DNA of 63,799 nt, the filler included, from Octopus bimaculoides (Eukaryota): assembly GCF_001194135.2 (NCBI RefSeq). It is 7 parts of 6 records of this genome, joined end to end, with 100 filler letters (N's around TTAATTAATTAA, not from the genome) between each part and the next. Parts side by side here need not be neighbours in the genome. Positions count along the whole stretch, not along the records: positions 38,552 to 48,815 come from NC_068984.1; 6 more parts are not named here. One strand, written 5' to 3'. Under the pieces are notes generated by a model. It did not search any database. It was not told the DNA's origin and was given only the letters and a program-made list of their open reading frames with translations. How positions within the stretch are numbered: the stretch's first letter is position 1; each line of letters opens with the position of its first letter. Shown one piece after another: positions 38,552 to 48,949 of the stretch. Both the position numbers and the translations under genes were made by a program.

Positions 38552-39562
38552 ATGTTCAATAATATTGAGATCTGGAGACTGTGGTAGCCAGATAAGATGT
38601 TCAACTTCACTAAAATGTTCCTCGTGCCATTCAGTAACAACTTTAGCTGTGTGAATTGGTGCATTATCATCCTGAAAGATTGTGTTTCCCTCCGGAAACA
38701 GTTTTGCAACCATAGGATGAATTTGATCAGATAAAATGCTTAAATAGTTTTGACTATTAATTTTGCCATGAAGAGAAACCATTGGGCTGGCAGATTTCCA
38801 AGATATAGCCCCACCACTCGATCATCACAGATCCTCCTCTATGTTTAACAGTTGGAAGAAGGCAGTCTGGGTCACATGCTTCTTTTGACTGTCTCCACAT
38901 GTATACTCGGCCTGTGGTCAGAAATATGGTAAAGGATGACTAGTCCGAGAAAATAACATTCTTCCACTGCTCTAGAGACCAATTCTGTAGGTTTTTACGC
39001 CAATCTAAATGCTTTGCAACATTTGTTTTTGAAAGTAGTGGTTTTCTGATTGTAGCTCTCCCATGAAATCTGGCTTTGTGCAGCTCCCGGCAAACAACTT
39101 TTGTGGAAACTGGGTTCTGAAAGTGGTCATTAAGCTCTGCAGTAATTTTGGGAGCTGTACTTTTCATGATCCTTTCTAAGTATTCATTTAAGAGTCCGAC
39201 AGTCCCTATCTGAAAGTTTTGGTTTTCTTCCAGAGTTTTGTTTCAACAAGGAGGTTTTTCCTTCTTTCTCAAAGGCTGTCATTACTTTTGAGACAGTACT
39301 TCTTGATACACCAAACATTTTAGCTATTTTCATTATGCTAGCATCTGCCATACTAGCACCAACAATTTGACCTCTTTGAAAGTCTGATAGATCTGTCATT
39401 TTAATGAATTTTAATTACTTTTTTCTGATGATATCTGAAAAGAAACAGCAATTTTAGCAGAACATATTAAACAACACTAATAATAAATCAAAAAACATAA
39501 AAATAAACAAGCAAAATTATGATGCTATGATACTAGGTGTTTCCATTATTTTGTCCAACTCC

Positions 39563-39564
<2 letters not shown>
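38552..39564 (-). mobile_element. Tc1-like transposon copy (DD36E), 3' end in a gap
   Basis: MTDLSDFQRGQIVG HTH, GRKPKLS, NVIFSD, FQDDNAPIH...SPDLNIIE; TIR at 39535-39564; stop and frameshifts. Confidence 0.92.
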
Positions 39565-39607
<43 letters not shown>

Positions 39608-39659
39608 ATCTGGAGATAAGCTATCAACACCTTTGGAGACATGCTACCAAGACCTTTGG

Positions 39660-40120
39660 AGATATGCAGTGTTTGAGAAGACCTGGCAAGTCAAGTGAGA
39701 CTGTAGCCATGGCCAACGCCAGTGTCGCATAACCAGACCAATTAAAAGTACCTTCAATTGTCAGGCAATATGCTGTGCTTGAGAAGACCTGTCAAGTGAA
39801 ATTGTAGTAGTGGCTGATGCCAATGCCAGTGGCACATAAAAAGCACTATTCAAGAGTGGGCAATGCCAGTGCTGGTGAAATGTAAAAACCACCATTTGAG
39901 CGTGGCTGATACCAGAGCCACCTGACTGGTCCCTGTGCTGGTAGCATGTAAAAAGCACCCACTACACCCTTCGAGTGGTTGGTGTTAGGAAGGGAATCCA
40001 TCGGTAGAAACCTTGTCAGATCAGATTGGATCCTGGTGCAGCTTCCTGGCTTACCAGTCTGCAGTCAAACTGCCCAACCCATGGCAGCATAGAAAGCAGA
40101 CGTTAAACATTGATGATGAT
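39660..40120 (+). mobile_element. RTE LINE 3' UTR/tail
   Basis: gagtggttggtgttaggaaggg...gacgttaaacattgatgatgat, homologous to 31380-31553. Confidence 0.8.
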
Positions 40121-40886
40121 GATATATATATGTGTACACACACACACACACACACAAACACACGCAATCATGTGCAACCATATTTAATGTTTGTGGAAAT
40201 AGGAATACTATTCAGTGCAGAAATAAGTCCTGGAGTAAAATTCTCCCCACAGACAAAATGTGTAAAACACATTAGGCTATGAATGATGTCAGCAGACTCC
40301 ATGATGCATGCATTTTTGCATCATTGTCTGTCATCAGCTATGAATACAAAATTTGTCATTCACTGTCCTATAAGAACAAGAGTTATTATTTATAAGAACA
40401 ATAAATAGTACATTTGTGATTGTAAATGCTGCAATTACTGTTTAACAAAGAGTTAATGATAAAATATTCATTAGTCCTCAGATATGCTTCTGCTGTTGCT
40501 TTTTGCCGGAATAGTTCTTGTTTTAATATTTTTTGTTTAGAGTTCTTGAATTTAAATTATAGATGTCAATGATTGAATATCATATTGAGTTAAATCTGTC
40601 TCAATATGACAAAGCGATTTTCCACATCAGCCACAATCTCTGAATAGAATGTTTCACAGGTTACTATGACATTGTTATCCTGAACTGATTCCAAACTACA
40701 AAATCCATCTGCATTTTACTGAACAGTATTTTAAGGGGACAAATCTGCAATAGAGGAACTGATGTAAAATTATCTGCAGTCATAATGTAAGTTCTTTTTA
40801 AAATTCAAATATTTAAGTATAATAATCATGTCATGCTATTATATATCAATAAAACTAATCCAATGACTATTTTTATATAATTACAG

Positions 40887-40948
40887 GAATTCCATTTACA
40901 GATCAGGAATTTATAGAAAGGATTAAGATTAAACTGATACAACCCTAT
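40887..40948 (+). CDS. Candidate internal exon (xIPFTDQEFIERIKIKLIQPY) of the HtrL-like gene
   Basis: ttttatataattacAG acceptor and GTAAGA donor; one open frame ending in phase 0, compatible with 46033. Confidence 0.3.
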
Positions 40949-41624
40949 GTAAGAATTTTTGAAATTTCTTCTCAACATATTGTTTCAGTTAAAAAAAGGA
41001 AAGAAAGAAAAAAATTAAACCATAAAAATCAGAATAGTGTTGCATTATTTAAAAATGTTTTTGATATAAATATCAACTTAAAGAAACATTTGCTATTGTT
41101 TTTACTTTCCAACATCTTTTAAATCAGTTATATGTAACATCTTTAGATAAATATTTTTTATCAAAACAATAATAACACTGGGTAACAAAACTTTCATTAT
41201 TTTTTTCTCTGGTCAGTAAGTGTTATTTCCTATTTACTTATATCTAGAAATCAAAGGAAATGACTACTATTCCCTTCAAACTTTGCTTTTGTGATCTGGA
41301 CATCAATGTTTTGAAACTGACCTATTTTCCATTACATTTCAGACAGATTTAGCACTGAGTTACTGAAGCAGAAATGCCATATTACCAAATATTCTGCTCA
41401 GTACCACAGATTTGCTTGTCAGTTGCTTGACCATAACCACTTGAGCATGTCATTTAGTGGCTGATGATATGTGCATCTCTGATCATGAGCAGAAGTAGTG
41501 TGGCGGGGAGCATCATAGCCATGTGTTGAGAGGGATCTTTAGGGTTTGAATAAATGTTACAAAAGCAAAGTTTGAAGGAAATAGCCATTTTTCACACTTT
41601 TGTGGAATGAGGTTAGTCAGTTAC

Positions 41625-41770
41625 AGTGCTGAACTGGTACTTATATCATTGACTCTGAAAAGATGGAAGGCAATGTTGACCTTGAGGGAATTTGAACTCA
41701 GAATGTAAAAAATGGACAAAATGCTGCTAAATATTTTGTTGAATGATTCTGCTAGCTTACTGCCTTACAA
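41625..41770 (-). mobile_element. SINE family A
   Basis: ctggtactt...gaatttgaactcagaatgt...attctgctagcttactgcctt. Confidence 0.7.
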
Positions 41771-42129
41771 CAGGAAGTAGGTGATAGTACAGGAACACCA
41801 CTGTGACACACTGACTGCCATGTGCTGGTGGTGGTGGTGGTGGGGGGGGGTGCAATGAAAGTCACTGTGAGGAAGGAGGGGGACTCTCTTCAGTTAATTT
41901 TTTAGACATGCTTTACAATTTTTATGTGTACAAAATACTGTAACATGAGCATTTGGAAAGTGGTTATCCAGTAGAATGAGGAAACTGCAGGAAAAATATG
42001 TCATTCAATCAATTCCTTTATTCATTACTCTGACAATAACAACAACAATAATAATAATCCCTTAATAACCACAAAGTTTCAAACAAGTAATTCAAAAGAT
42101 CATACATAAAGAGTTACAAAGCATGTGGG

Positions 42130-43420
42130 GATGTTCATATGTATAGTGGGGTTGTGAGATATGTGAAACAAAATATGTTTACAATATATTAAGACAGGTT
42201 ATGATTTAGAAGCTGAATTTTTACTGTTTTCTGAAAACTGGGGGTTCCAAAATTACCCCTGAGCAATTTTGGTCTTAACTGAGTTGAAAGCCCCAAATCC
42301 TCTGGGCCATAATATCTCAGCTGTTCATATACTACTGGCCTAATCTTTCTTGACCATCTATCATCTAAGGGTACTTGGTTCTTCTTCAATCAGCACAGTA
42401 ATTTACTTGTCTTCTTTTAAAGTCATCTTTAAATCTAATAGACTGGCATTCTCCCATGGGACTATCATAATCATAGAGTTCAAACACTCTGTGGAAGTAG
42501 GCCCCTCTTCATGAGGAACTTTTGCTGTTTTTGTCTGACATTTTTGTCTCCTCTTTCTTTTCTTAGTAGTTCCCCCTACCATTCTCAATTTTTGAGCTCC
42601 TTCCTCACAACCATTGATGATGTTATGCTTTATGGTATTGCTTCCCATAAGCTCTGGCTGGTCTTGTGCTAGAAAAGGGTACCCCTTGGGTTCTGAGTCA
42701 TCATCTACCCTTTGCATTAGTGTTATTGAGAATGAGGCAATTTTGCTTGCCTGTAATTTGACTTGTCCTGGATGCAGCTGGTGGTGCTCTTGAAATAGTG
42801 ACAGCAGCTACAATTGTCTTCACTTAGGAACAACCATTGTTATTGCTAGTATCTCTGCTGTTGGCAACCACTCTCTCTTTTCCCTCTGATTTTTCAGACT
42901 TTTGAGTGACTGCAATAATGCTTTCTGACTTTTACAAACATTCTGATTAAATCCTCTACTCTCTGAAAAGAGTACAATTCTAGTATATCCTTTTGGCCCT
43001 TGGGGATCAATAGAACCTGGATGCTCGTATAGAATTCACCAAACCAAATGCTGTTGTAAGTTACCCACACACTCAAAACATATCTATACTATTATGCAAA
43101 GATGATGACCTGTAAAGGGTCGAGATCCATGACAATATCTCTGGCCATGATTCTATCATTCCCAAAAGTTATGTACTGTGATAGCAGCCTTTGGGTAGGT
43201 ATGTAGGTATGTAGCTTTACCTATTTCATCTTGTATTTTATCTTCTATATACTCTTGGTTGAAGCACATATCCTTCGACATACCAACCAAAGTCTCTTTC
43301 AGCTCTTCCTTTGAAGGTCTATAGAAGCCTTTTAATTTTATGTAAAACACTGGTTTGTTACCTTCCTCCTCGCTCTTTCCTTGGTGAAAATCTTTGGACA
43401 AGAAAACAATATGCTTTGTG
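42130..43420 (-). mobile_element. Decayed gag/ORF1-like region of a LINE
   Basis: Several broken minus-strand ORFs; IRMFVKVRKHYCSH resembles the VEGRKPxCxxC zinc-knuckle context of LINE ORF1. Confidence 0.35.
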
Positions 43421-43424
43421 ACAT

Positions 43425-43668
43425 AGTTAGCACATAAAATACACCATTTGAGCGTGGCCGTTGCCAGTACCGTCTGACTGGCCTTCGTGCGGGTGACACG
43501 TAAAAGCACCCACTACACTCTCAGAGTGGTTGGCGTTAGGAAGGGCATCCAGCTGTAGAAACTCTGCCAAATCAGATTGGAGTCTGGTGTAGCCATCTGG
43601 TTTCACCAGTCCTCAGTCAAATCGTCCAACCCATGCTAGCATGGAAAGCGGACGTTAAACGATGATGG
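43425..43668 (+). mobile_element. RTE LINE 3' tail
   Basis: Close match to 31300-31535, ending GGACGTTAAACGATGATG. Confidence 0.88.
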
Positions 43669-44149
43669 TTAGCAGTGCATTTTCTTTTAGATGGTTCAAG
43701 TTCAGTTGTTCCTTTTGTCCTTCCACATCAGCAAATGATAGAAATTGTTGCTGTTGTTGTTAGTTGGGTTACCTTTGCTTCTTGAACTGTTTATTTTCAT
43801 CATTCAAAAAAATGTTTCCAACACTATGTGCCTTCTGATGTACAGTGTAGATGTCTTACTTCAAAGTTCCATCTGTGTGTTTTTTTTTGTTTGAATATAT
43901 TTTGGGGGCGTGTTTGTTTGCATTACTGCAACAACCAGTATGATAAGCATCATAACATACCATCTCTGAGGCAGTGAATGAGTAAATGTTGCACATGAAA
44001 ATTTGTAAAAAATGTGTAAAGCAGTTTAAAATGTTTTAAGACAAACCTTTTCTTTACTCCAGGTAATGAAATAGACATTCAAATGTTCCTAAGATATTTA
44101 GTAGTTAAAAGAACAAATCCCTCTTTCTGCTCCTACTACTGTTACTACT

Positions 44150-44625
44150 AAATTATAATCCTTTCTACTAAAGGCACAATGCCTGAAATTTGTTGGAAGG
44201 GGACTAGTTGATTACGTCAACCCCATGTTTCACTGGTACTTAATTTATTGACTCTGAAAGGATGAAAGGCTAACTTGACCTTGGCAGGATTAGAACTCAA
44301 AATGTAGCAACAAACGAAATACTGCTAAGCATTTCACCCAGTGTGCTAACAATTCTGCCAGCTCACCACCTTAATAACAACAACAACAACAACAACAACA
44401 ACAATAATGGTGATGATGATATTTTTTCTAATTTTATCACAAGATCAGCAAATTTGAGGGGAAAGGGCTAGTCAACTACATCAAATCCAGTACTTGATAC
44501 TAGTACTTTATTTTATCCCTGTAAAGATGAAAGATATATAGTTGTCCTCAGCAGGATTTGAACTCAAAATGTAAAGATCTATAACAAATGCCATTGATGA
44601 TTCTGCCAGCTAGCCACCTTAATAA
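44150..44625 (-). repeat. Two head-to-tail SINE family A copies with an (AAC)n/(GAT)n spacer
   Basis: Heads ccagctcaccacctt (~44360) and ccagctagccacctt (~44606). Confidence 0.75.
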
Positions 44626-45034
44626 TTATACTAACAATTATAACTAGCTGGAACCGTAGGTATTCCATGGAGTAGGCAAGCTCTACAACTTTCTTATTGT
44701 ATTTTATATTTGAAATATATATATATATACAAAAATAGCTCAAACTGAAAGAATTATTTTAATGCAGAGCAACATATGAAATGCAGCAACACTTTCTGGT
44801 GTGTAGTAGATTTTTGGTGAAAAATTGTTCATGAAGTTTCACTGTGGTTAGATAAATTTCATGGATCTCTGTGAAATGTGACTATTCACATTGAACAATA
44901 AACATGATAGAAGTCTTTTAACTTTTACTTGCTTCAGTCATTAGAATGTGGCCATGCTAGGGAGAATTTTTAGCCAAATGAATTGCTTTCAGTACTTATT
45001 ATATTGGTCTCTTTTGCTGAACCACAAAGTTACA

Positions 45035-45260
45035 TGGATGTAAACACCAACATTAGTTGTCAAGTGGAGGTAGGGGACAAACAAACACACACACACACAC
45101 ACTTCTTTCAGTTTCTTTCTATAAATCCACTCACAAGACTATGGTCAGCCTGAAGCAAGCTATAGCAGAAGACACTTGCTCAGAGGTTCCACATAGTGAG
45201 ACTAAATCTGGAACTATCTGGCTGGGAAGCAAGCTTCTGACCACACAGCCATGCCTGCAC
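45035..45260 (-). mobile_element. SINE family B
   Basis: ttgtcaagtgg...(CA)n...aaatccactcacaag...accacacagccatgcc. Confidence 0.8.
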
Positions 45261-46032
45261 CTATAAACATTTGCTTTTCTGAATATCCTTGACATATAAG
45301 CATGAAGGTGTTTTGATTTACTGTTGACATATTTTTTCAGTGTTACATGTACAACATTTCATCTATTTGGCCATGTAGCTATCATATCTGTTAAAACAAA
45401 CTTGTTAAGTTCAGTCTCTGTTCATGTATCCTGTTCTTCCATCTCAGATAAAGAATAGAGAAAATATATTGATTTGAGATATATGTTTTTATATATTTAC
45501 AGTTTAGAAAATAAAACTTTTCTATTAATCTTCCTCTAACATCATTTTACTCCTTATACATGAATTAATATTAATACTATATCACTCATTAACATCTTCC
45601 CATTGCATCTTGGTCTTATATGTAATTTTACATACTATCATCACTTAATTGTAATTATTGCTTTTCTGTGTTGATTGTGTTTAGATTGATCTAAATAATT
45701 TCAAAGTTGATTATCTATTGTTGTTATTGAGGTCACTGAAGGGTGATAGTATTTTATACTAACTGAAATTTTCTTAGATATAAATATTTCCTTATGATAT
45801 TAATTATGATAATGCCTGTATATATTTGTTAAAAAGATTTCCCTCTTTCATTTAGGCCAAATGATTCACTCAATCTTATAATTTTATTTGTAGTCATTTG
45901 TTTTATAATATATATATATATATTGTGATTTTCAATGATGAGAATATGACACTATAAAGATATGACCTATTTTGAATTGTTTTTCTTGAATGTCCTATCT
46001 TAATATAATTTTAACTATTATTTATTCAACAG

Positions 46033-46968
46033 GATCCTCAGACAAAATTGATTAATGACTTGAATATAACATTCACAACACCAAACATCATTCAAAATTC
46101 TACAGAAATATCTTCAATTCAGGAAGACATTTTCTCTTTTAAAACGGAACTTCCAAAAAATTCTATGAACCTTTCCAATGAAATCTCAGTATTGACTGCA
46201 TATTTCAATTTAGGAGCCTTTGCAAAAGGAAGTCCTGGACATAAGTATACTCCAAATGGCTATTACAAATGGATGTCTATATTTGGCAGCATGACTAATA
46301 ATCTAATTGTTTATACAGATGATAAAACTGCATACGAATATTTCCAAAAATTAAGGGAAAAGTTTCCTAAAGAACGAACGAAGTTATTTCTGATAGACAA
46401 GAAAGAATTGTGGTCATTTAATATAGAAAAAAATATTTCTGATATATTTAAACAGCCTGGTTACCCACGATTTCTTCCCAATACTGTTGTGCCTGGATAT
46501 TCTTGTGCCATGCATGCAAAATTTGAAGTTCTTAACCGGGTTATAAGAAAGAACTATTTTCATACTAAATACTTTATGTGGTTAGATATTGGACTTTTTC
46601 GATCTCTCACTAGAACTCCTAAATTTGAATTGAGAGTACCTACAAATTTTGATGATACTAAAGTTGCTTACAGCTTTGTATTTGATTTTAAGAAGGATGT
46701 AACTTATAAAGACATTATTTATCACAACATGGTGTGGGTAGGAGGTGCCAGCAATCTTGGTAAATATGATGTTTTGTACAAATTTACTCAAGAGTATTTG
46801 AACTTTGTTAACAAGTCTTTGTCCATAAAACTAATGAGTACAGATCAACAGATAATATATGGAATGTATGTGGATAAACATAAACCAGAAACAAAACTTC
46901 AACTTTATAAAACAGGTTGGTTTAAATTGGGTTATTTATGCTATGCAGCTAAAAATACACCAACCTGA
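46033..46968 (+). CDS. HtrL/YibB-family protein (PF09612-like), putative glycosyltransferase-like; large terminal exon
   Basis: Intact 311-codon frame after acceptor tttattcaacAG; motifs VLTAYFNLG, LIVYTD, YSCAMHAKFE, YFMWLDIG, VWVGG, MSTDQQII; sequons NIT, NST, NLS in the N-terminal stem; family assignment from recalled motifs. Confidence 0.82.
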   Translation, partial: DPQTKLINDLNITFTTPNIIQNSTEISSIQEDIFSFKTELPKNSMNLSNEISVLTAYFNLGAFAKGSPGHKYTPNGYYKWMSIFGSMTNNLIVYTDDKTAYEYFQKLREKFPKERTKLFLIDKKELWSFNIEKNISDIFKQPGYPRFLPNTVVPGYSCAMHAKFEVLNRVIRKNYFHTKYFMWLDIGLFRSLTRTPKFELRVPTNFDDTKVAYSFVFDFKKDVTYKDIIYHNMVWVGGASNLGKYDVLYKFTQEYLNFVNKSLSIKLMSTDQQIIYGMYVDKHKPETKLQLYKTGWFKLGYLCYAAKNTPT

Positions 46969-47169
46969 TGTGTATATACATGTGTATAAGATAATATGAA
47001 GATATCAGCATCTTGTTCACACACACACACACACACACACACAATTCATCTTTCACCTGGGGCATAAATCACCTTTGTTCAGCATTCTTGTTTTTACAGC
47101 TTTGTTCTTTCATATTTCCTCTGTCTCTCTATCTCTCTCTGCATATATATATATATATATATATATATG

Positions 47170-47492
47170 AGCGTTGGGCCTCACAGAGGCAAAGTGGCTG
47201 AGTTCCTTTCGAGTGATATGCCTCACGGAGGCAATGACCTTTGGCATTATGTTGTGCTTGTGAAGAAGTCCCATCAAGCCAAGCAAAACCGCAGTCATGG
47301 CAGATACTGGTGTCCTGCAAATGGCACTCATTACACCCTCAGAGTGGTTGGCATTAGGAAGGGCATCCAGCCATAGAAAACTATGCTAAATCAGACTGGA
47401 GTTTGGTTGCAGCCTTCCAGCTTACCAGCCAAAGTCAAACCGTCCAACCCATGCCAGCATAGACAGCAGACGTTAAATGATGATGATGATAC
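47170..47492 (+). mobile_element. RTE LINE 3' UTR/tail
   Basis: agagtggttggcattaggaagggcatcc...gacgttaaatgatgatgatgat. Confidence 0.8.
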
Positions 47493-48949
47493 ATAATGAG
47501 GACTAAGATTGAAATCATTGAAAAGTCAGTACAATGATGCTAATAGAAATATAGGAGTGAAAAACAGAAGACAGCTTGTACTTTACGCTATATGTCAATA
47601 TTTCAAGGTTAATATCTCTCATCTGGAGAAAATGCAAGATGGTGTTCAGCTGGCATGCTTTGCTCAGATGTATTGGGAAGAGGTTGGGGGTTGAGACCTG
47701 CATTGAACAATCTGTCTTGCATAACTCTAGTTTTGTCAGAAGCACCATCTGGAGGCTACATATCAGTATCAAGGAACATATGCAGACAAACACATCATTC
47801 AAAAAAACACTTGGAGAAATGCCACACTCAGGTCTTCACAGTTACAACAGAGCATAATACTGGTAATTTGAAGATTAAAGAAGTCCATCATTAATAAAAG
47901 GAAACTATTGATCAATAAAACTGAGTTACAAGTGGCAGATTGGTTATTGTAACAATACCTACCATTCTGCACATATCACAAACCATCTTCCTATACATTT
48001 GAGCTAAAGATACCAGCTGACATCAACCTCTATTTTTCCCCTGATAAAGAGGTATTGAGCCCAAAATATAGAAATATGAAATAAAGGGCAAACTACTTTT
48101 CGGTCTTTTTTATTTGTTTTCGCACCCATATTTCAATTTGCATGACATTAGTTTTTGAACAATTTCAGTCTTAATTTTGAATATCACATAATGCTTCACT
48201 CAGATATATCTGTAAAAAGAGAATGTTTTTGATGTTTGTTATTGTTTTATATATATATATATAACAATTACAAACATCAAAAACTATCTCTTTTTATAGA
48301 GTCAAACTAATACATTCCATGTGCACATTCTCTTGTTTGTAATTGTTAATTTTAATGATTATTTATTTGATTTGACTATGTGTGTATTTTTCATGCTATG
48401 CTTAGAAGCAATGCATGTAACCAGAATCTCCAACTTGAGCTGAAGGGAACAAACCATTCCAAATTCTTGTTATAGTATTTGTGTGGATGAAGCTAGGACT
48501 GACCAGATTGTACTGGCATAGAATCATATGATGTATAATAATGAAGTCAGATTAAATAATGATATTTTGAATGCATTTGGTACATAGATTTCAGATGATT
48601 GTGTAATAGACAAAAAGGGAATTTTGTGTCATATACAAAGTTTTCCTCAATTAAGACATACCAAAATATAGAAATATATGGCTTAACTGAGGAAAATTTT
48701 GCTTAAGAGATGGAATTCCTTTCTTATCTGTTGCACTATTATCTGAAATGTACCTATTAAAACATTAAAAGCATCACTACCCAGCATGGATGATATATAT
48801 ATATATATATATATANNNNNNNNNNNNNNNNNNNNNNNNNNNNNNNNNNNNNNNNNNNNTTAATTAATTAANNNNNNNNNNNNNNNNNNNNNNNNNNNNN
48901 NNNNNNNNNNNNNNNATATACACAGACACACACTCACACACACACAGAG

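What the first reader, a model, noticed from the sequence alone, without database searches (positions are those of the whole stretch)
46033..46968. Intact HtrL/YibB-like gene: a bacterial LPS-locus orphan family in a cephalopod
Seen: the only clean long host ORF in the window, with the whole domain in one exon, a WLDIG motif at the position of a GT-A DxD-like site and a stem with N-glycosylation sequons. Established: E. coli htrL (yibB) lies in the waa LPS-core region and the family is functionally uncharacterised; homologues exist in some invertebrates. Inference: a type II Golgi glycan-modifying enzyme for an undescribed invertebrate glycan pathway, possibly of old horizontal or retroposed origin.
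Basis: partly seen in the sequence, partly recalled or inferred. Interest (0 to 1): 0.7.

Follow-up and report, generated by a model that had tools for sequence, protein, structure and literature searches.

The report
Octopus HtrL-like putative Golgi glycosyltransferase gene
This is the intact last exon of an already catalogued Octopus bimaculoides gene for a membrane-anchored enzyme-like protein of the uncharacterised HtrL family, which looks like a sugar-transferring enzyme and is common in molluscs, worms and sea anemones, not peculiar to cephalopods.

Summary
Window 46033..46968 (+) is a 311-codon open frame plus stop, far longer than chance allows. It passes Pfam's own threshold for PF09612 HtrL_YibB.

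It is not a whole gene. It is the last of three coding exons of O. bimaculoides LOC106877989 (360 aa, 100% identical). Exon 2 is at 40887..40948. Exon 1, with the start codon and membrane anchor, lies about 9.8 kb before the piece.

The gene is intact and under purifying selection (dN/dS about 0.2 against Argonauta). Three octopods share the same exon plan.

An AlphaFold model (pLDDT 86) matches GT-A glycosyltransferases, best the retaining families GT6 and GT8. The residues conserved from bacteria to animals sit where those families bind donor and metal: WLD234-I-G in place of DxD, VGG287, and D320-Q321 (compare LgtC D188-Q189).

The family is not an orphan in a cephalopod. Named homologues come from many molluscs, annelids, a nemertean and a cnidarian. 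The nearest bacterial and viral relatives are only 21-27% identical. That rules out contamination or recent transfer and leaves ancient transfer open.

No member of the family has a defined activity. Verdict: a catalogued member of a known, uncharacterised family, of modest interest.

The parts
40887..40948 (+). Coding exon 2 (62 nt). It supplies the last two bases of the R29 codon and residues 30-49 (IPFTDQEFIERIKIKLIQPY), the start of the stem. AG acceptor at 40885-40886, GT donor at 40949-40950.
   Evidence: tblastn of P0001 to the piece: aa 30-49 at 40889..40948, 100% identity. Splice sites read.
40949..46032 (+). Intron 2 (5084 nt, phase 0). AT-rich, with simple repeats. It ends in a pyrimidine-rich tract and a CAG acceptor at 46030-46032.
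   Evidence: The two minus-strand ORFs inside it (42403..42717 and 43156..43509) have no Pfam hit.
46033..46968 (+). Terminal coding exon: residues 50-360 of LOC106877989 plus the TGA stop (46966..46968).
   Evidence: The 317-codon stop-free stretch compares with a maximum of 159 in shuffles.
46033..46173 (+). Stem region, aa 50-96. Predicted disordered. It carries three N-glycosylation sequons: N60 (46063..46071), N71 and N95. It evolves faster than the domain.
   Evidence: pLDDT below 50 for aa 45-79. Sequons. dN/dS 0.60 in the stem against 0.17 in the domain, versus Argonauta.
46180..46929 (+). HtrL_YibB domain, aa 99-348. Predicted GT-A-like alpha/beta fold.
   Evidence: Pfam hit. AlphaFold pLDDT mostly 92-98 across the domain. 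Foldseek matches to GT6 and GT8.
46195..46215 (+). TAYFNLG motif (aa 104-110), at the end of the first beta strand and the loop after it. Inferred to be the nucleotide-binding end of the Rossmann-like half.
   Evidence: A105 is invariant and G110 is 92% conserved across 24 animal, bacterial and giant-virus sequences. Strand 97-106 in the model.
46579..46593 (+). WLDIG motif (aa 232-236). D234 directly follows strand 227-233, where GT-A enzymes carry DxD. Here the pattern is D-x-G.
   Evidence: W232, D234 and G236 are 100% invariant. Secondary structure. The (non-significant) hhalign path puts it on the GT8 DxD.
46837..46851 (+). STDQQ motif (aa 318-322). D320-Q321 are inferred to be the donor-sugar-binding and catalytic-centre residues, like D188-Q189 of LgtC (GT8) and D302-E303 of human GTA (GT6).
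   Evidence: D320 is 100% and Q321 96% conserved; one bacterial homologue has E there. The spacing from D234 to Q321 is 87 residues. The matching spacings are 84-86 in LgtC and 90-92 in GTA.

Best explanation
The feature is the terminal exon of a functional, spliced Octopus bimaculoides gene, LOC106877989.

Shown here:
- The predicted protein has a six-residue N-terminal tail, then a 19-residue hydrophobic stretch (L7-L25, inside a predicted helix spanning aa 2-28), then a disordered stem of about 65 residues with N-glycosylation sequons, then a 260-residue HtrL_YibB domain.
- The domain model has a GT-A (nucleotide-diphospho-sugar transferase) fold.
- The gene is under purifying selection.

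Inferred:
- The protein is a type II membrane protein of the secretory pathway, most likely the Golgi, with the catalytic domain in the lumen.
- It transfers a sugar from a nucleotide sugar to a glycan acceptor, probably with retention of anomeric configuration, as GT6 and GT8 enzymes do.
- D234 (WLD-I-G, the DxD position) and the basic invariants K212 and R239 would hold the diphosphate. Because the second acidic residue of DxD is a glycine, this may work without the usual two-carboxylate metal site.
- D320-Q321 would hold the donor sugar at the reaction centre.

Donor, acceptor and product are unknown. No family member in any organism has a defined activity.
For: Gene and family:
- 100% match to the 360-aa RefSeq protein.
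- Exons mapped in the chromosome-scale assembly.
- PF09612 above the gathering score in all 39 animal homologues aligned.
- E. coli HtrL aligns end to end at 22% identity, E 5e-6.

Functional gene:
- Same three-exon plan in O. sinensis and Argonauta.
- dN/dS 0.22 over the exon and 0.17 over the domain, against Argonauta.

Fold:
- AlphaFold pLDDT 86, pTM 0.78.
- Foldseek against the PDB: top hits are GT6 enzymes (BoGT6a, human ABO transferases, bovine alpha-1,3-GalT), E 2.5e-6, probability 1.0, TM-score 0.52-0.59 by target length. The GT8 enzyme XXYLT1 is also hit.
- Viral library hits are labelled glycosyltransferases.

Motifs:
- A105, Y126, K212, W232, D234, G236, G287 and D320 are invariant and Q321 is 96% conserved across animals, bacteria and a giant virus.
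- Motif order and spacing match LgtC (D103xD105, N153AG, D188Q189) and human GTA (D211xD213, E303), as verified on PDB sequences.

Context in bacteria:
- HtrL genes sit between GT4, GT2 and GT8 genes.
- HtrL domains are fused to GT31, GT11, GT14 and GT32-type domains and a methyltransferase domain.

Topology: the N-terminal helix has pLDDT 88-96, the stem is disordered, and there are five sequons.
Against: - No enzymatic activity is known for any HtrL protein.
- There is no sequence-level link to GT6 or GT8. The profile search against PDB sequences found nothing. The hhalign probabilities were below 1%. The residue equivalences therefore rest on fold, motif order and spacing only.
- TM-scores are moderate.
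- The canonical DxD is incomplete (D-x-G).
- Gln at the catalytic-centre position matches GT8, but in GT6 a Glu-to-Gln change was made in BoGT6a to trap substrates (the 4cj8 title).
- Golgi residence, membrane orientation, expression and glycosylation were not tested.
- In C. elegans an HtrL-domain protein was described as a secreted protein (PMC8989417).
Confidence: 0.6

Rival explanations
1. The GT-A-fold domain transfers something other than a plain sugar from a nucleotide-activated donor. Candidates are a sugar-phosphate or a phospho-substituent such as phosphocholine or aminoethylphosphonate. Alternatively it is an inverting rather than a retaining transferase.
For: - The DxD motif is incomplete (D-x-G), and several basic residues are invariant within the 39 animal homologues (K114, R157, K212, R239). 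K212 stays invariant and R157 96% conserved when bacteria and a giant virus are added.
- No donor is known for any member.
- From my own knowledge, not tested here: the phyla in which named homologues were seen (molluscs, annelids, nemerteans, cnidarians; nematodes per PMC8989417) overlap with animals known for phosphocholine-, phosphonate- or methyl-decorated glycans.
Against: - The best structural matches are classical retaining sugar transferases.
- The D-Q motif is the GT8 hallmark.
- Known phosphocholine and ribitol-phosphate transferases use other folds (my own knowledge).
Confidence: 0.15
2. The protein is a non-catalytic or secreted glycan-binding or immune-related protein that merely keeps a GT-A scaffold. 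An antimicrobial role was suggested for C. elegans HTRL-1.
For: - PMC8989417 groups htrl-1 with antimicrobial defence genes and calls its product secreted.
- A peptide matched to an HtrL_YibB protein was reported from snail mucus (PMC11206429).
- The N-terminal hydrophobic stretch could in principle act as a cleaved signal peptide.
Against: - The residues at the presumed active site are invariant from bacteria to animals. That is not expected for a scaffold that has lost catalysis.
- The 19-residue hydrophobic core is long for a signal peptide and fits a signal anchor.
- Bacterial homologues sit among, and are fused to, glycosyltransferases.
- Golgi enzymes are often shed by stem cleavage, so presence in mucus is compatible with an enzyme.
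Confidence: 0.1
3. The ORF is bacterial contamination, a recent horizontal acquisition, or a dead retrocopy.
For: - The family was first described in bacteria.
- The domain is intron-free.
- The piece holds transposon debris.
Against: - The coding sequence is split by two introns with canonical splice sites.
- It lies on a 148-Mb chromosome scaffold.
- GC content is 31%, like its surroundings.
- Orthologues in two other octopods have the same structure.
- dN/dS is about 0.2.
- The closest bacterial and viral relatives are only 21-27% identical.
- Animal sequences cluster together in 227 of 300 bootstrap trees.
Confidence: 0.01

Closest known systems
E. coli HtrL (YibB, b3618) and bacterial HtrL_YibB proteins (Pfam PF09612, TIGR02192)
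   Same: - Homologous over the whole domain: 22% identity over 281 columns.
- Shared motifs TAYFxxG, WxDxG, GG, DQ and WF.
- Linked to glycan biosynthesis by context.
- Activity undefined.
   Different: - The octopus protein scores 49.8 bits against the 264.9-bit cut-off of the YibB equivalog model.
- It has a eukaryotic signal anchor and a glycosylated stem, and its gene is spliced.
- It carries animal-specific motifs such as PNT and YSCAMHAKFE, which the sampled Verrucomicrobia share only in part.
Animal 'protein HtrL-like' paralogues (molluscs, annelids, nemerteans, cnidarians) and C. elegans HTRL-1 (T11F9.12)
   Same: - Same subfamily, at 35-82% identity to the octopus protein.
- Same layout: hydrophobic N-terminus, variable stem, domain.
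- The domain is encoded by one exon in Haliotis, Lineus and Exaiptasia.
   Different: - None is characterised.
- HTRL-1 is described as a 736-aa secreted nematode protein. Its sequence was not compared here.
GT6 retaining glycosyltransferases (human ABO GTA/GTB, bovine alpha-1,3-GalT, Bacteroides BoGT6a)
   Same: - Best structural matches.
- Same order of motifs: first-strand loop, DxD position, GG, acidic/amide pair.
- BoGT6a, titled a metal-independent glycosyltransferase in its PDB entry, also lacks a true DxD by my recollection (NxN, not checked here).
   Different: - No detectable sequence similarity.
- D-x-G instead of DxD.
- Q321 where GT6 has the essential Glu (E303 in GTA).
GT8 retaining glycosyltransferases (LgtC, XXYLT1, glycogenin)
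   Same: - GT-A fold hit to XXYLT1.
- D-Q pair like LgtC D188-Q189, at the same distance from the DxD position.
- An NAG/VGG motif in between.
   Different: - Pfam Glyco_transf_8 is not hit.
- hhalign probability below 1%.
- The second Asp of DxD is missing.

Membership tests
Pfam PF09612 HtrL_YibB | Score at or above the curated gathering threshold over most of the model | tested here: met
   44.6 bits against 24.1, profile positions 2-261 of 267. All 39 aligned animal homologues also hit.
Pfam PF09612 HtrL_YibB | Family-wide conserved motifs (TAYFxxG, WxDxG, GG, DQ, WF) | tested here: met
   A105, W232, D234, G236, G287 and D320 are invariant, and Q321 and W345 are 96% conserved, across 24 animal, bacterial and viral sequences.
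NCBIfam TIGR02192 (protein YibB, equivalog) | Score at or above the equivalog cut-off, meaning the same function as E. coli YibB | tested here: not met
   49.8 bits against a cut-off of 264.9. The protein is a distant homologue, not an equivalog.
GT-A fold nucleotide-sugar transferases | Rossmann-like alpha/beta/alpha fold matching solved GT-A enzymes | tested here: met
   Model pLDDT 86. Foldseek found 148 PDB matches at E <= 0.001; the 50 listed are GT6 enzymes apart from one GT8 (XXYLT1). Probability 1.0, TM-score 0.52-0.59 by target length.
GT-A fold nucleotide-sugar transferases | DxD (or variant) metal/diphosphate motif after the fourth strand | tested here: inconclusive
   D234 is invariant at the right place, but the motif reads D-I-G and the second carboxylate is absent.
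GT-A fold nucleotide-sugar transferases | Nucleotide-sugar-dependent transfer activity | not testable with these tools
   Needs a biochemical assay. No activity is reported for any family member in the papers held.
CAZy GT6 | Sequence membership (Pfam Glyco_transf_6) and a catalytic Glu in the DES-type motif | tested here: not met
   No Pfam hit. hhalign against human GTA was not significant. Gln is found at the inferred position.
CAZy GT8 | Sequence membership (Pfam Glyco_transf_8), DxD and the DQD motif | tested here: not met
   No Pfam hit. hhalign probability 0.4-0.7%. The D-Q pair is present but DxD is incomplete.
Type II Golgi glycosyltransferase architecture | Short cytoplasmic tail, single N-terminal signal anchor, stem, C-terminal lumenal catalytic domain | tested here: met
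   Sequence and model show a predicted helix at aa 2-28, disorder at 45-79 and the domain at 97-354. Homologues share an N-terminal hydrophobic segment. Localisation itself was not tested.

The most novel reading that the evidence does not exclude
The animal HtrL-like proteins are a so far unrecognised family of Golgi glycosyltransferases with a D-x-G site in place of DxD, possibly metal-independent. The family expanded in molluscs, annelids, nemerteans and cnidarians. It would make one of the lineage-specific glycan decorations of these animals whose enzymes are still unknown. The family would have entered animals, or left them, by an ancient exchange with bacteria such as Verrucomicrobia, whose HtrL domains group with the animal ones.
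Probability: 0.15. Interest if true: 0.65.

Novelty: new member of a known kind. Interest (0 to 1): 0.3.

Why it matters
HtrL_YibB is a large family. At 50% identity clustering, 2712 clusters match the animal profile at E <= 0.001, and 279 match at E <= 1e-30. No member has an assigned reaction, even in E. coli K-12.

The analysis gives a concrete hypothesis that can be tested by mutation: a retaining-type GT-A enzyme with D234 and D320-Q321 at its centre. It also shows that animals hold a well-conserved, multi-copy branch of the family. That corrects a published statement that, outside nematodes, the domain occurs only in bacteria (PMC8989417).

For the octopus genome itself the gene is ordinary. 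It is already a RefSeq model with the Pfam domain on record.

Tried and rejected
- Sequence searches of the PDB found nothing useful, with either the exon or the 39-sequence profile.
- Profile comparisons with human GTA, a Clostridium GT8 and a four-sequence GT8 mini-profile were not significant. I use them only to note that the motifs line up in the same order.
- The paper on Campylobacter WlaTC (Holden et al. 2012) is not held. My recollection that InterPro names the family 'WlaTC/HtrL glycosyltransferase' could not be checked.
- A Biopython neighbour-joining run timed out. A Kimura-distance run gave undefined distances and a meaningless tree. Both were replaced by a Poisson-distance tree.
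- Rfam and tRNA scans of the piece found nothing.
- The other ORFs in the piece have no Pfam hit, except a transposase remnant.
- The second large protein search returned only 48 proteins. They added bivalves and a chiton but no new phylum.
- Contamination, recent transfer and a dead retrocopy were considered and rejected (see the rival explanations).
- Logan contigs that carry the related protein P0008 could not be used as evidence of expression, because the nature of those sequencing runs is unknown.

Full report
**1. The observation**

In the piece 38552..48815, the longest ORF by far runs to a TGA stop at 46966..46968 on the + strand. The stop-free stretch is 317 codons. In 200 shuffles of the piece the longest stretch averaged 104 codons and never exceeded 159. 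About 3e-6 such frames are expected by chance.

The translation hits Pfam PF09612 HtrL_YibB at E 1.8e-11. The score is 44.6 bits against a gathering score of 24.1, over profile positions 2-261 of 267.

**2. What the ORF is**

There is no ATG at 46033. The frame opens directly after a pyrimidine-rich tract and a CAG at 46030-46032, which is a splice acceptor.

The protein search returned Octopus bimaculoides LOC106877989 (P0001, 360 aa), 100% identical over the whole query. Mapping that protein back to the sequence gave three coding exons:
- Residues 50-360 map to 46033..46965.
- Residues 30-49 map to a 62-nt exon at 40887..40948, with AG and GT splice sites.
- Residues 1-28 are not in the piece.

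In the chromosome-scale assembly (CM046604.1, locus L009) exon 1 is at L009:10001-10085. The piece begins at L009:19788. The exon holds part of the stem and the whole catalytic domain.

**3. Is it a working gene?**

O. sinensis (L010) and Argonauta hians (L011) have the same exon plan: a membrane-anchor exon, a small exon and a large terminal exon. All three terminal exons are open.

Nei-Gojobori dN/dS for the terminal exon:
- O. bimaculoides against Argonauta: 0.22 overall, 0.17 in the domain and 0.60 in the stem.
- O. bimaculoides against the O. sinensis copy: 0.41. That copy may be a paralogue.

The domain is under purifying selection. GC content is like the surroundings. Contamination and pseudogene readings are excluded.

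**4. Protein anatomy**

The N-terminus reads MGSVQK, then a 19-residue hydrophobic run (LCMIVFIFATISFIAFVTL), then KFQR.

The AlphaFold model was built on a 39-sequence alignment and has mean pLDDT 86 and pTM 0.78. It shows:
- a helix at aa 2-28;
- disorder at aa 45-79;
- a compact alpha/beta domain at aa 97-354, with pLDDT mostly 92-98.

Sequons lie at N60, N71 and N95 in the stem and at N183 and N309 in the domain. This is the standard layout of a type II Golgi glycosyltransferase. Orientation and localisation are inferred, not shown.

**5. Fold and likely mechanism**

Foldseek against the PDB gave 148 matches at E <= 0.001. The best are:
- the GT6 retaining enzymes BoGT6a, human ABO GTA/GTB and bovine alpha-1,3-GalT, at E 2.5e-6, probability 1.0 and TM-score 0.52-0.59 by target length;
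- the GT8 enzyme XXYLT1.

I aligned 15 animal sequences, 8 bacterial sequences and 1 giant-virus sequence:
- A105, Y126, K212, W232, D234, G236, G287 and D320 are invariant.
- Q321 is 96% conserved. One bacterial homologue has Glu there.

D234 directly follows strand 227-233, which comes after the long helix 203-222. That is where GT-A enzymes carry DxD. Here the motif is D-I-G.

I verified two reference enzymes on PDB sequences:
- Human GTA has D211-V-D213 and E303.
- LgtC has D103-I-D105, N153-A-G and D188-Q189-D190. Entry 1ss9 has Glu at position 189.

The distance from the DxD position to the D-Q/E pair is 87 residues in the octopus protein, 84-86 in LgtC and 90-92 in GTA. A Gly-rich motif lies between them in all three.

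Profile-profile comparisons with GT6 and GT8 were not significant. The best hhalign path does, however, place WLDIG on YLDxD, VWVGG on YFNAG and TDQ on DQD.

My inference is a retaining-type GT-A transferase. D234, with basic residues such as K212 and R239, would act at the diphosphate. D320-Q321 would act at the donor sugar. The missing second carboxylate may mean an unusual or absent metal requirement, as in BoGT6a. This is a hypothesis and rests on fold, motif order and spacing.

**6. Context of the family elsewhere**

- E. coli K-12 htrL lies between kbl-tdh and rfaD-waaF-waaC-waaL.
- In uncultured Bacilli and Clostridium genomes the HtrL gene sits between GT4, GT2 and GT8 genes.
- In one Verrucomicrobia genome the domain is the C-terminal module of a 1364-aa protein that also carries GT31-like, GT11 and FkbM-methyltransferase domains. 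In another, an 1813-aa protein carries GT32-type, GT11 and GT14 (Branch) domains, and its HtrL-like region was detected by tblastn only.
- Giant-virus proteins, some labelled glycosyltransferase or Fringe-like, match the model at E 4e-15 to 1e-12.

All of this points to glycan synthesis. The papers held give no reaction for any member:
- A. baumannii outer-core locus papers list HtrL as hypothetical.
- A 2026 E. coli study calls it a putative glycosyltransferase.

**7. Distribution and origin**

Homologues that carry names come from these groups:
- cephalopods (Octopus species, Argonauta);
- many gastropods;
- bivalves;
- a chiton;
- annelids (Capitella, Helobdella, Owenia);
- a nemertean (Lineus);
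- a sea anemone (Exaiptasia).

There are often several genes per genome. A coral genomics paper lists the domain, and C. elegans htrl-1 carries it.

The full-library profile search counts 2712 clusters at E <= 0.001 and 279 at E <= 1e-30. I did not test for absence in vertebrates or arthropods.

The closest bacterial sequences in a scan of one genome for each of 185,579 bacterial and archaeal species are 21-27% identical. The only IMG/VR hit, a giant-virus MAG, is 25% identical.

In a neighbour-joining tree with 300 bootstrap replicates:
- the animals group together in 227 replicates;
- the animals plus the two Verrucomicrobia domains group together in 296 replicates.
The bacteria in this tree were found with patterns taken from animal motifs, so the sample is biased.

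The domain is encoded by one exon in Octopus, Haliotis, Lineus and Exaiptasia. This fits an old intron-less origin with later 5' exon capture, but it is equally compatible with simple absence of intron gain. Any transfer would predate the cnidarian-bilaterian split, and its direction is open.

**8. Verdict**

Three points need correction:
- the ORF is an exon, not a gene;
- the family is widespread in lophotrochozoans and cnidarians and is already labelled in public databases;
- retroposition of this gene is not supported.

The gene is a catalogued member of a known but uncharacterised family. What this analysis adds is the motif-level hypothesis for the family's mechanism.

Noticed in passing
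window 38552..38782 (-), cut by the piece's edge: Remnant of a Tc1/mariner-type transposase (Pfam DDE_3, E 2.4e-7), lying in intron 1 of the gene.
   Followed up: partly
window 39573..39609, 44376..44404, 47018..47043, 47143..47168: Microsatellites: (TA)18 and (AAC)10 in the introns, and (CA)13 and (AT)13 just downstream of the stop codon.
   Followed up: no
L002:2722-6816 and L003:1196-6637 (Verrucomicrobia MAGs): Giant multi-domain proteins string together glycosyltransferase families typical of eukaryotes. One has GT31-like, GT11, FkbM methyltransferase and HtrL domains. The other has GT32-type, GT11 and GT14/Branch domains plus an HtrL-like region found by tblastn only. Their HtrL domains group with the animal ones in 296 of 300 bootstrap trees.
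   Followed up: partly
L005:720-7699 ('Candidatus Porisulfidus' MAG): Tandem array of at least four HtrL-like genes (277-287 aa) alternating with ORFs of about 315-346 aa. The copy aligned (L005:6848-7699) has D-E instead of D-Q at the conserved pair, which is the GT6-type residue.
   Followed up: partly
L014:2705-3664 and 8001-8960 (Lineus longissimus): Two intron-less HtrL-like genes, 97% identical, 5.3 kb apart. This looks like a recent tandem duplication.
   Followed up: no
P0006 / P0007 (O. sinensis LOC115210785): The stem of this paralogue contains a short piece of a pyruvate kinase barrel domain (KPKIIAVAQDTKGPEIRTGLLKG; Pfam PF00224, E 8.9e-7), repeated in isoform X2. It may be an exonised fragment or a gene-model artefact.
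   Followed up: no
Literature: PMC8989417 (eLife 2022): The paper states that the HtrL domain, outside nematodes, occurs only in a bacterial protein. The mollusc, annelid, nemertean and cnidarian homologues found here contradict that statement.
   Followed up: yes
L016-L019 (Logan assemblies SRR8281672, SRR8281665, SRR25158145, SRR29271456): A 331-aa relative (P0008, 62% identical) is carried whole on contigs of about 2 kb from several sequencing runs. It could be a transcript or an intron-less copy in another cephalopod. The source organism is not known to me.
   Followed up: no
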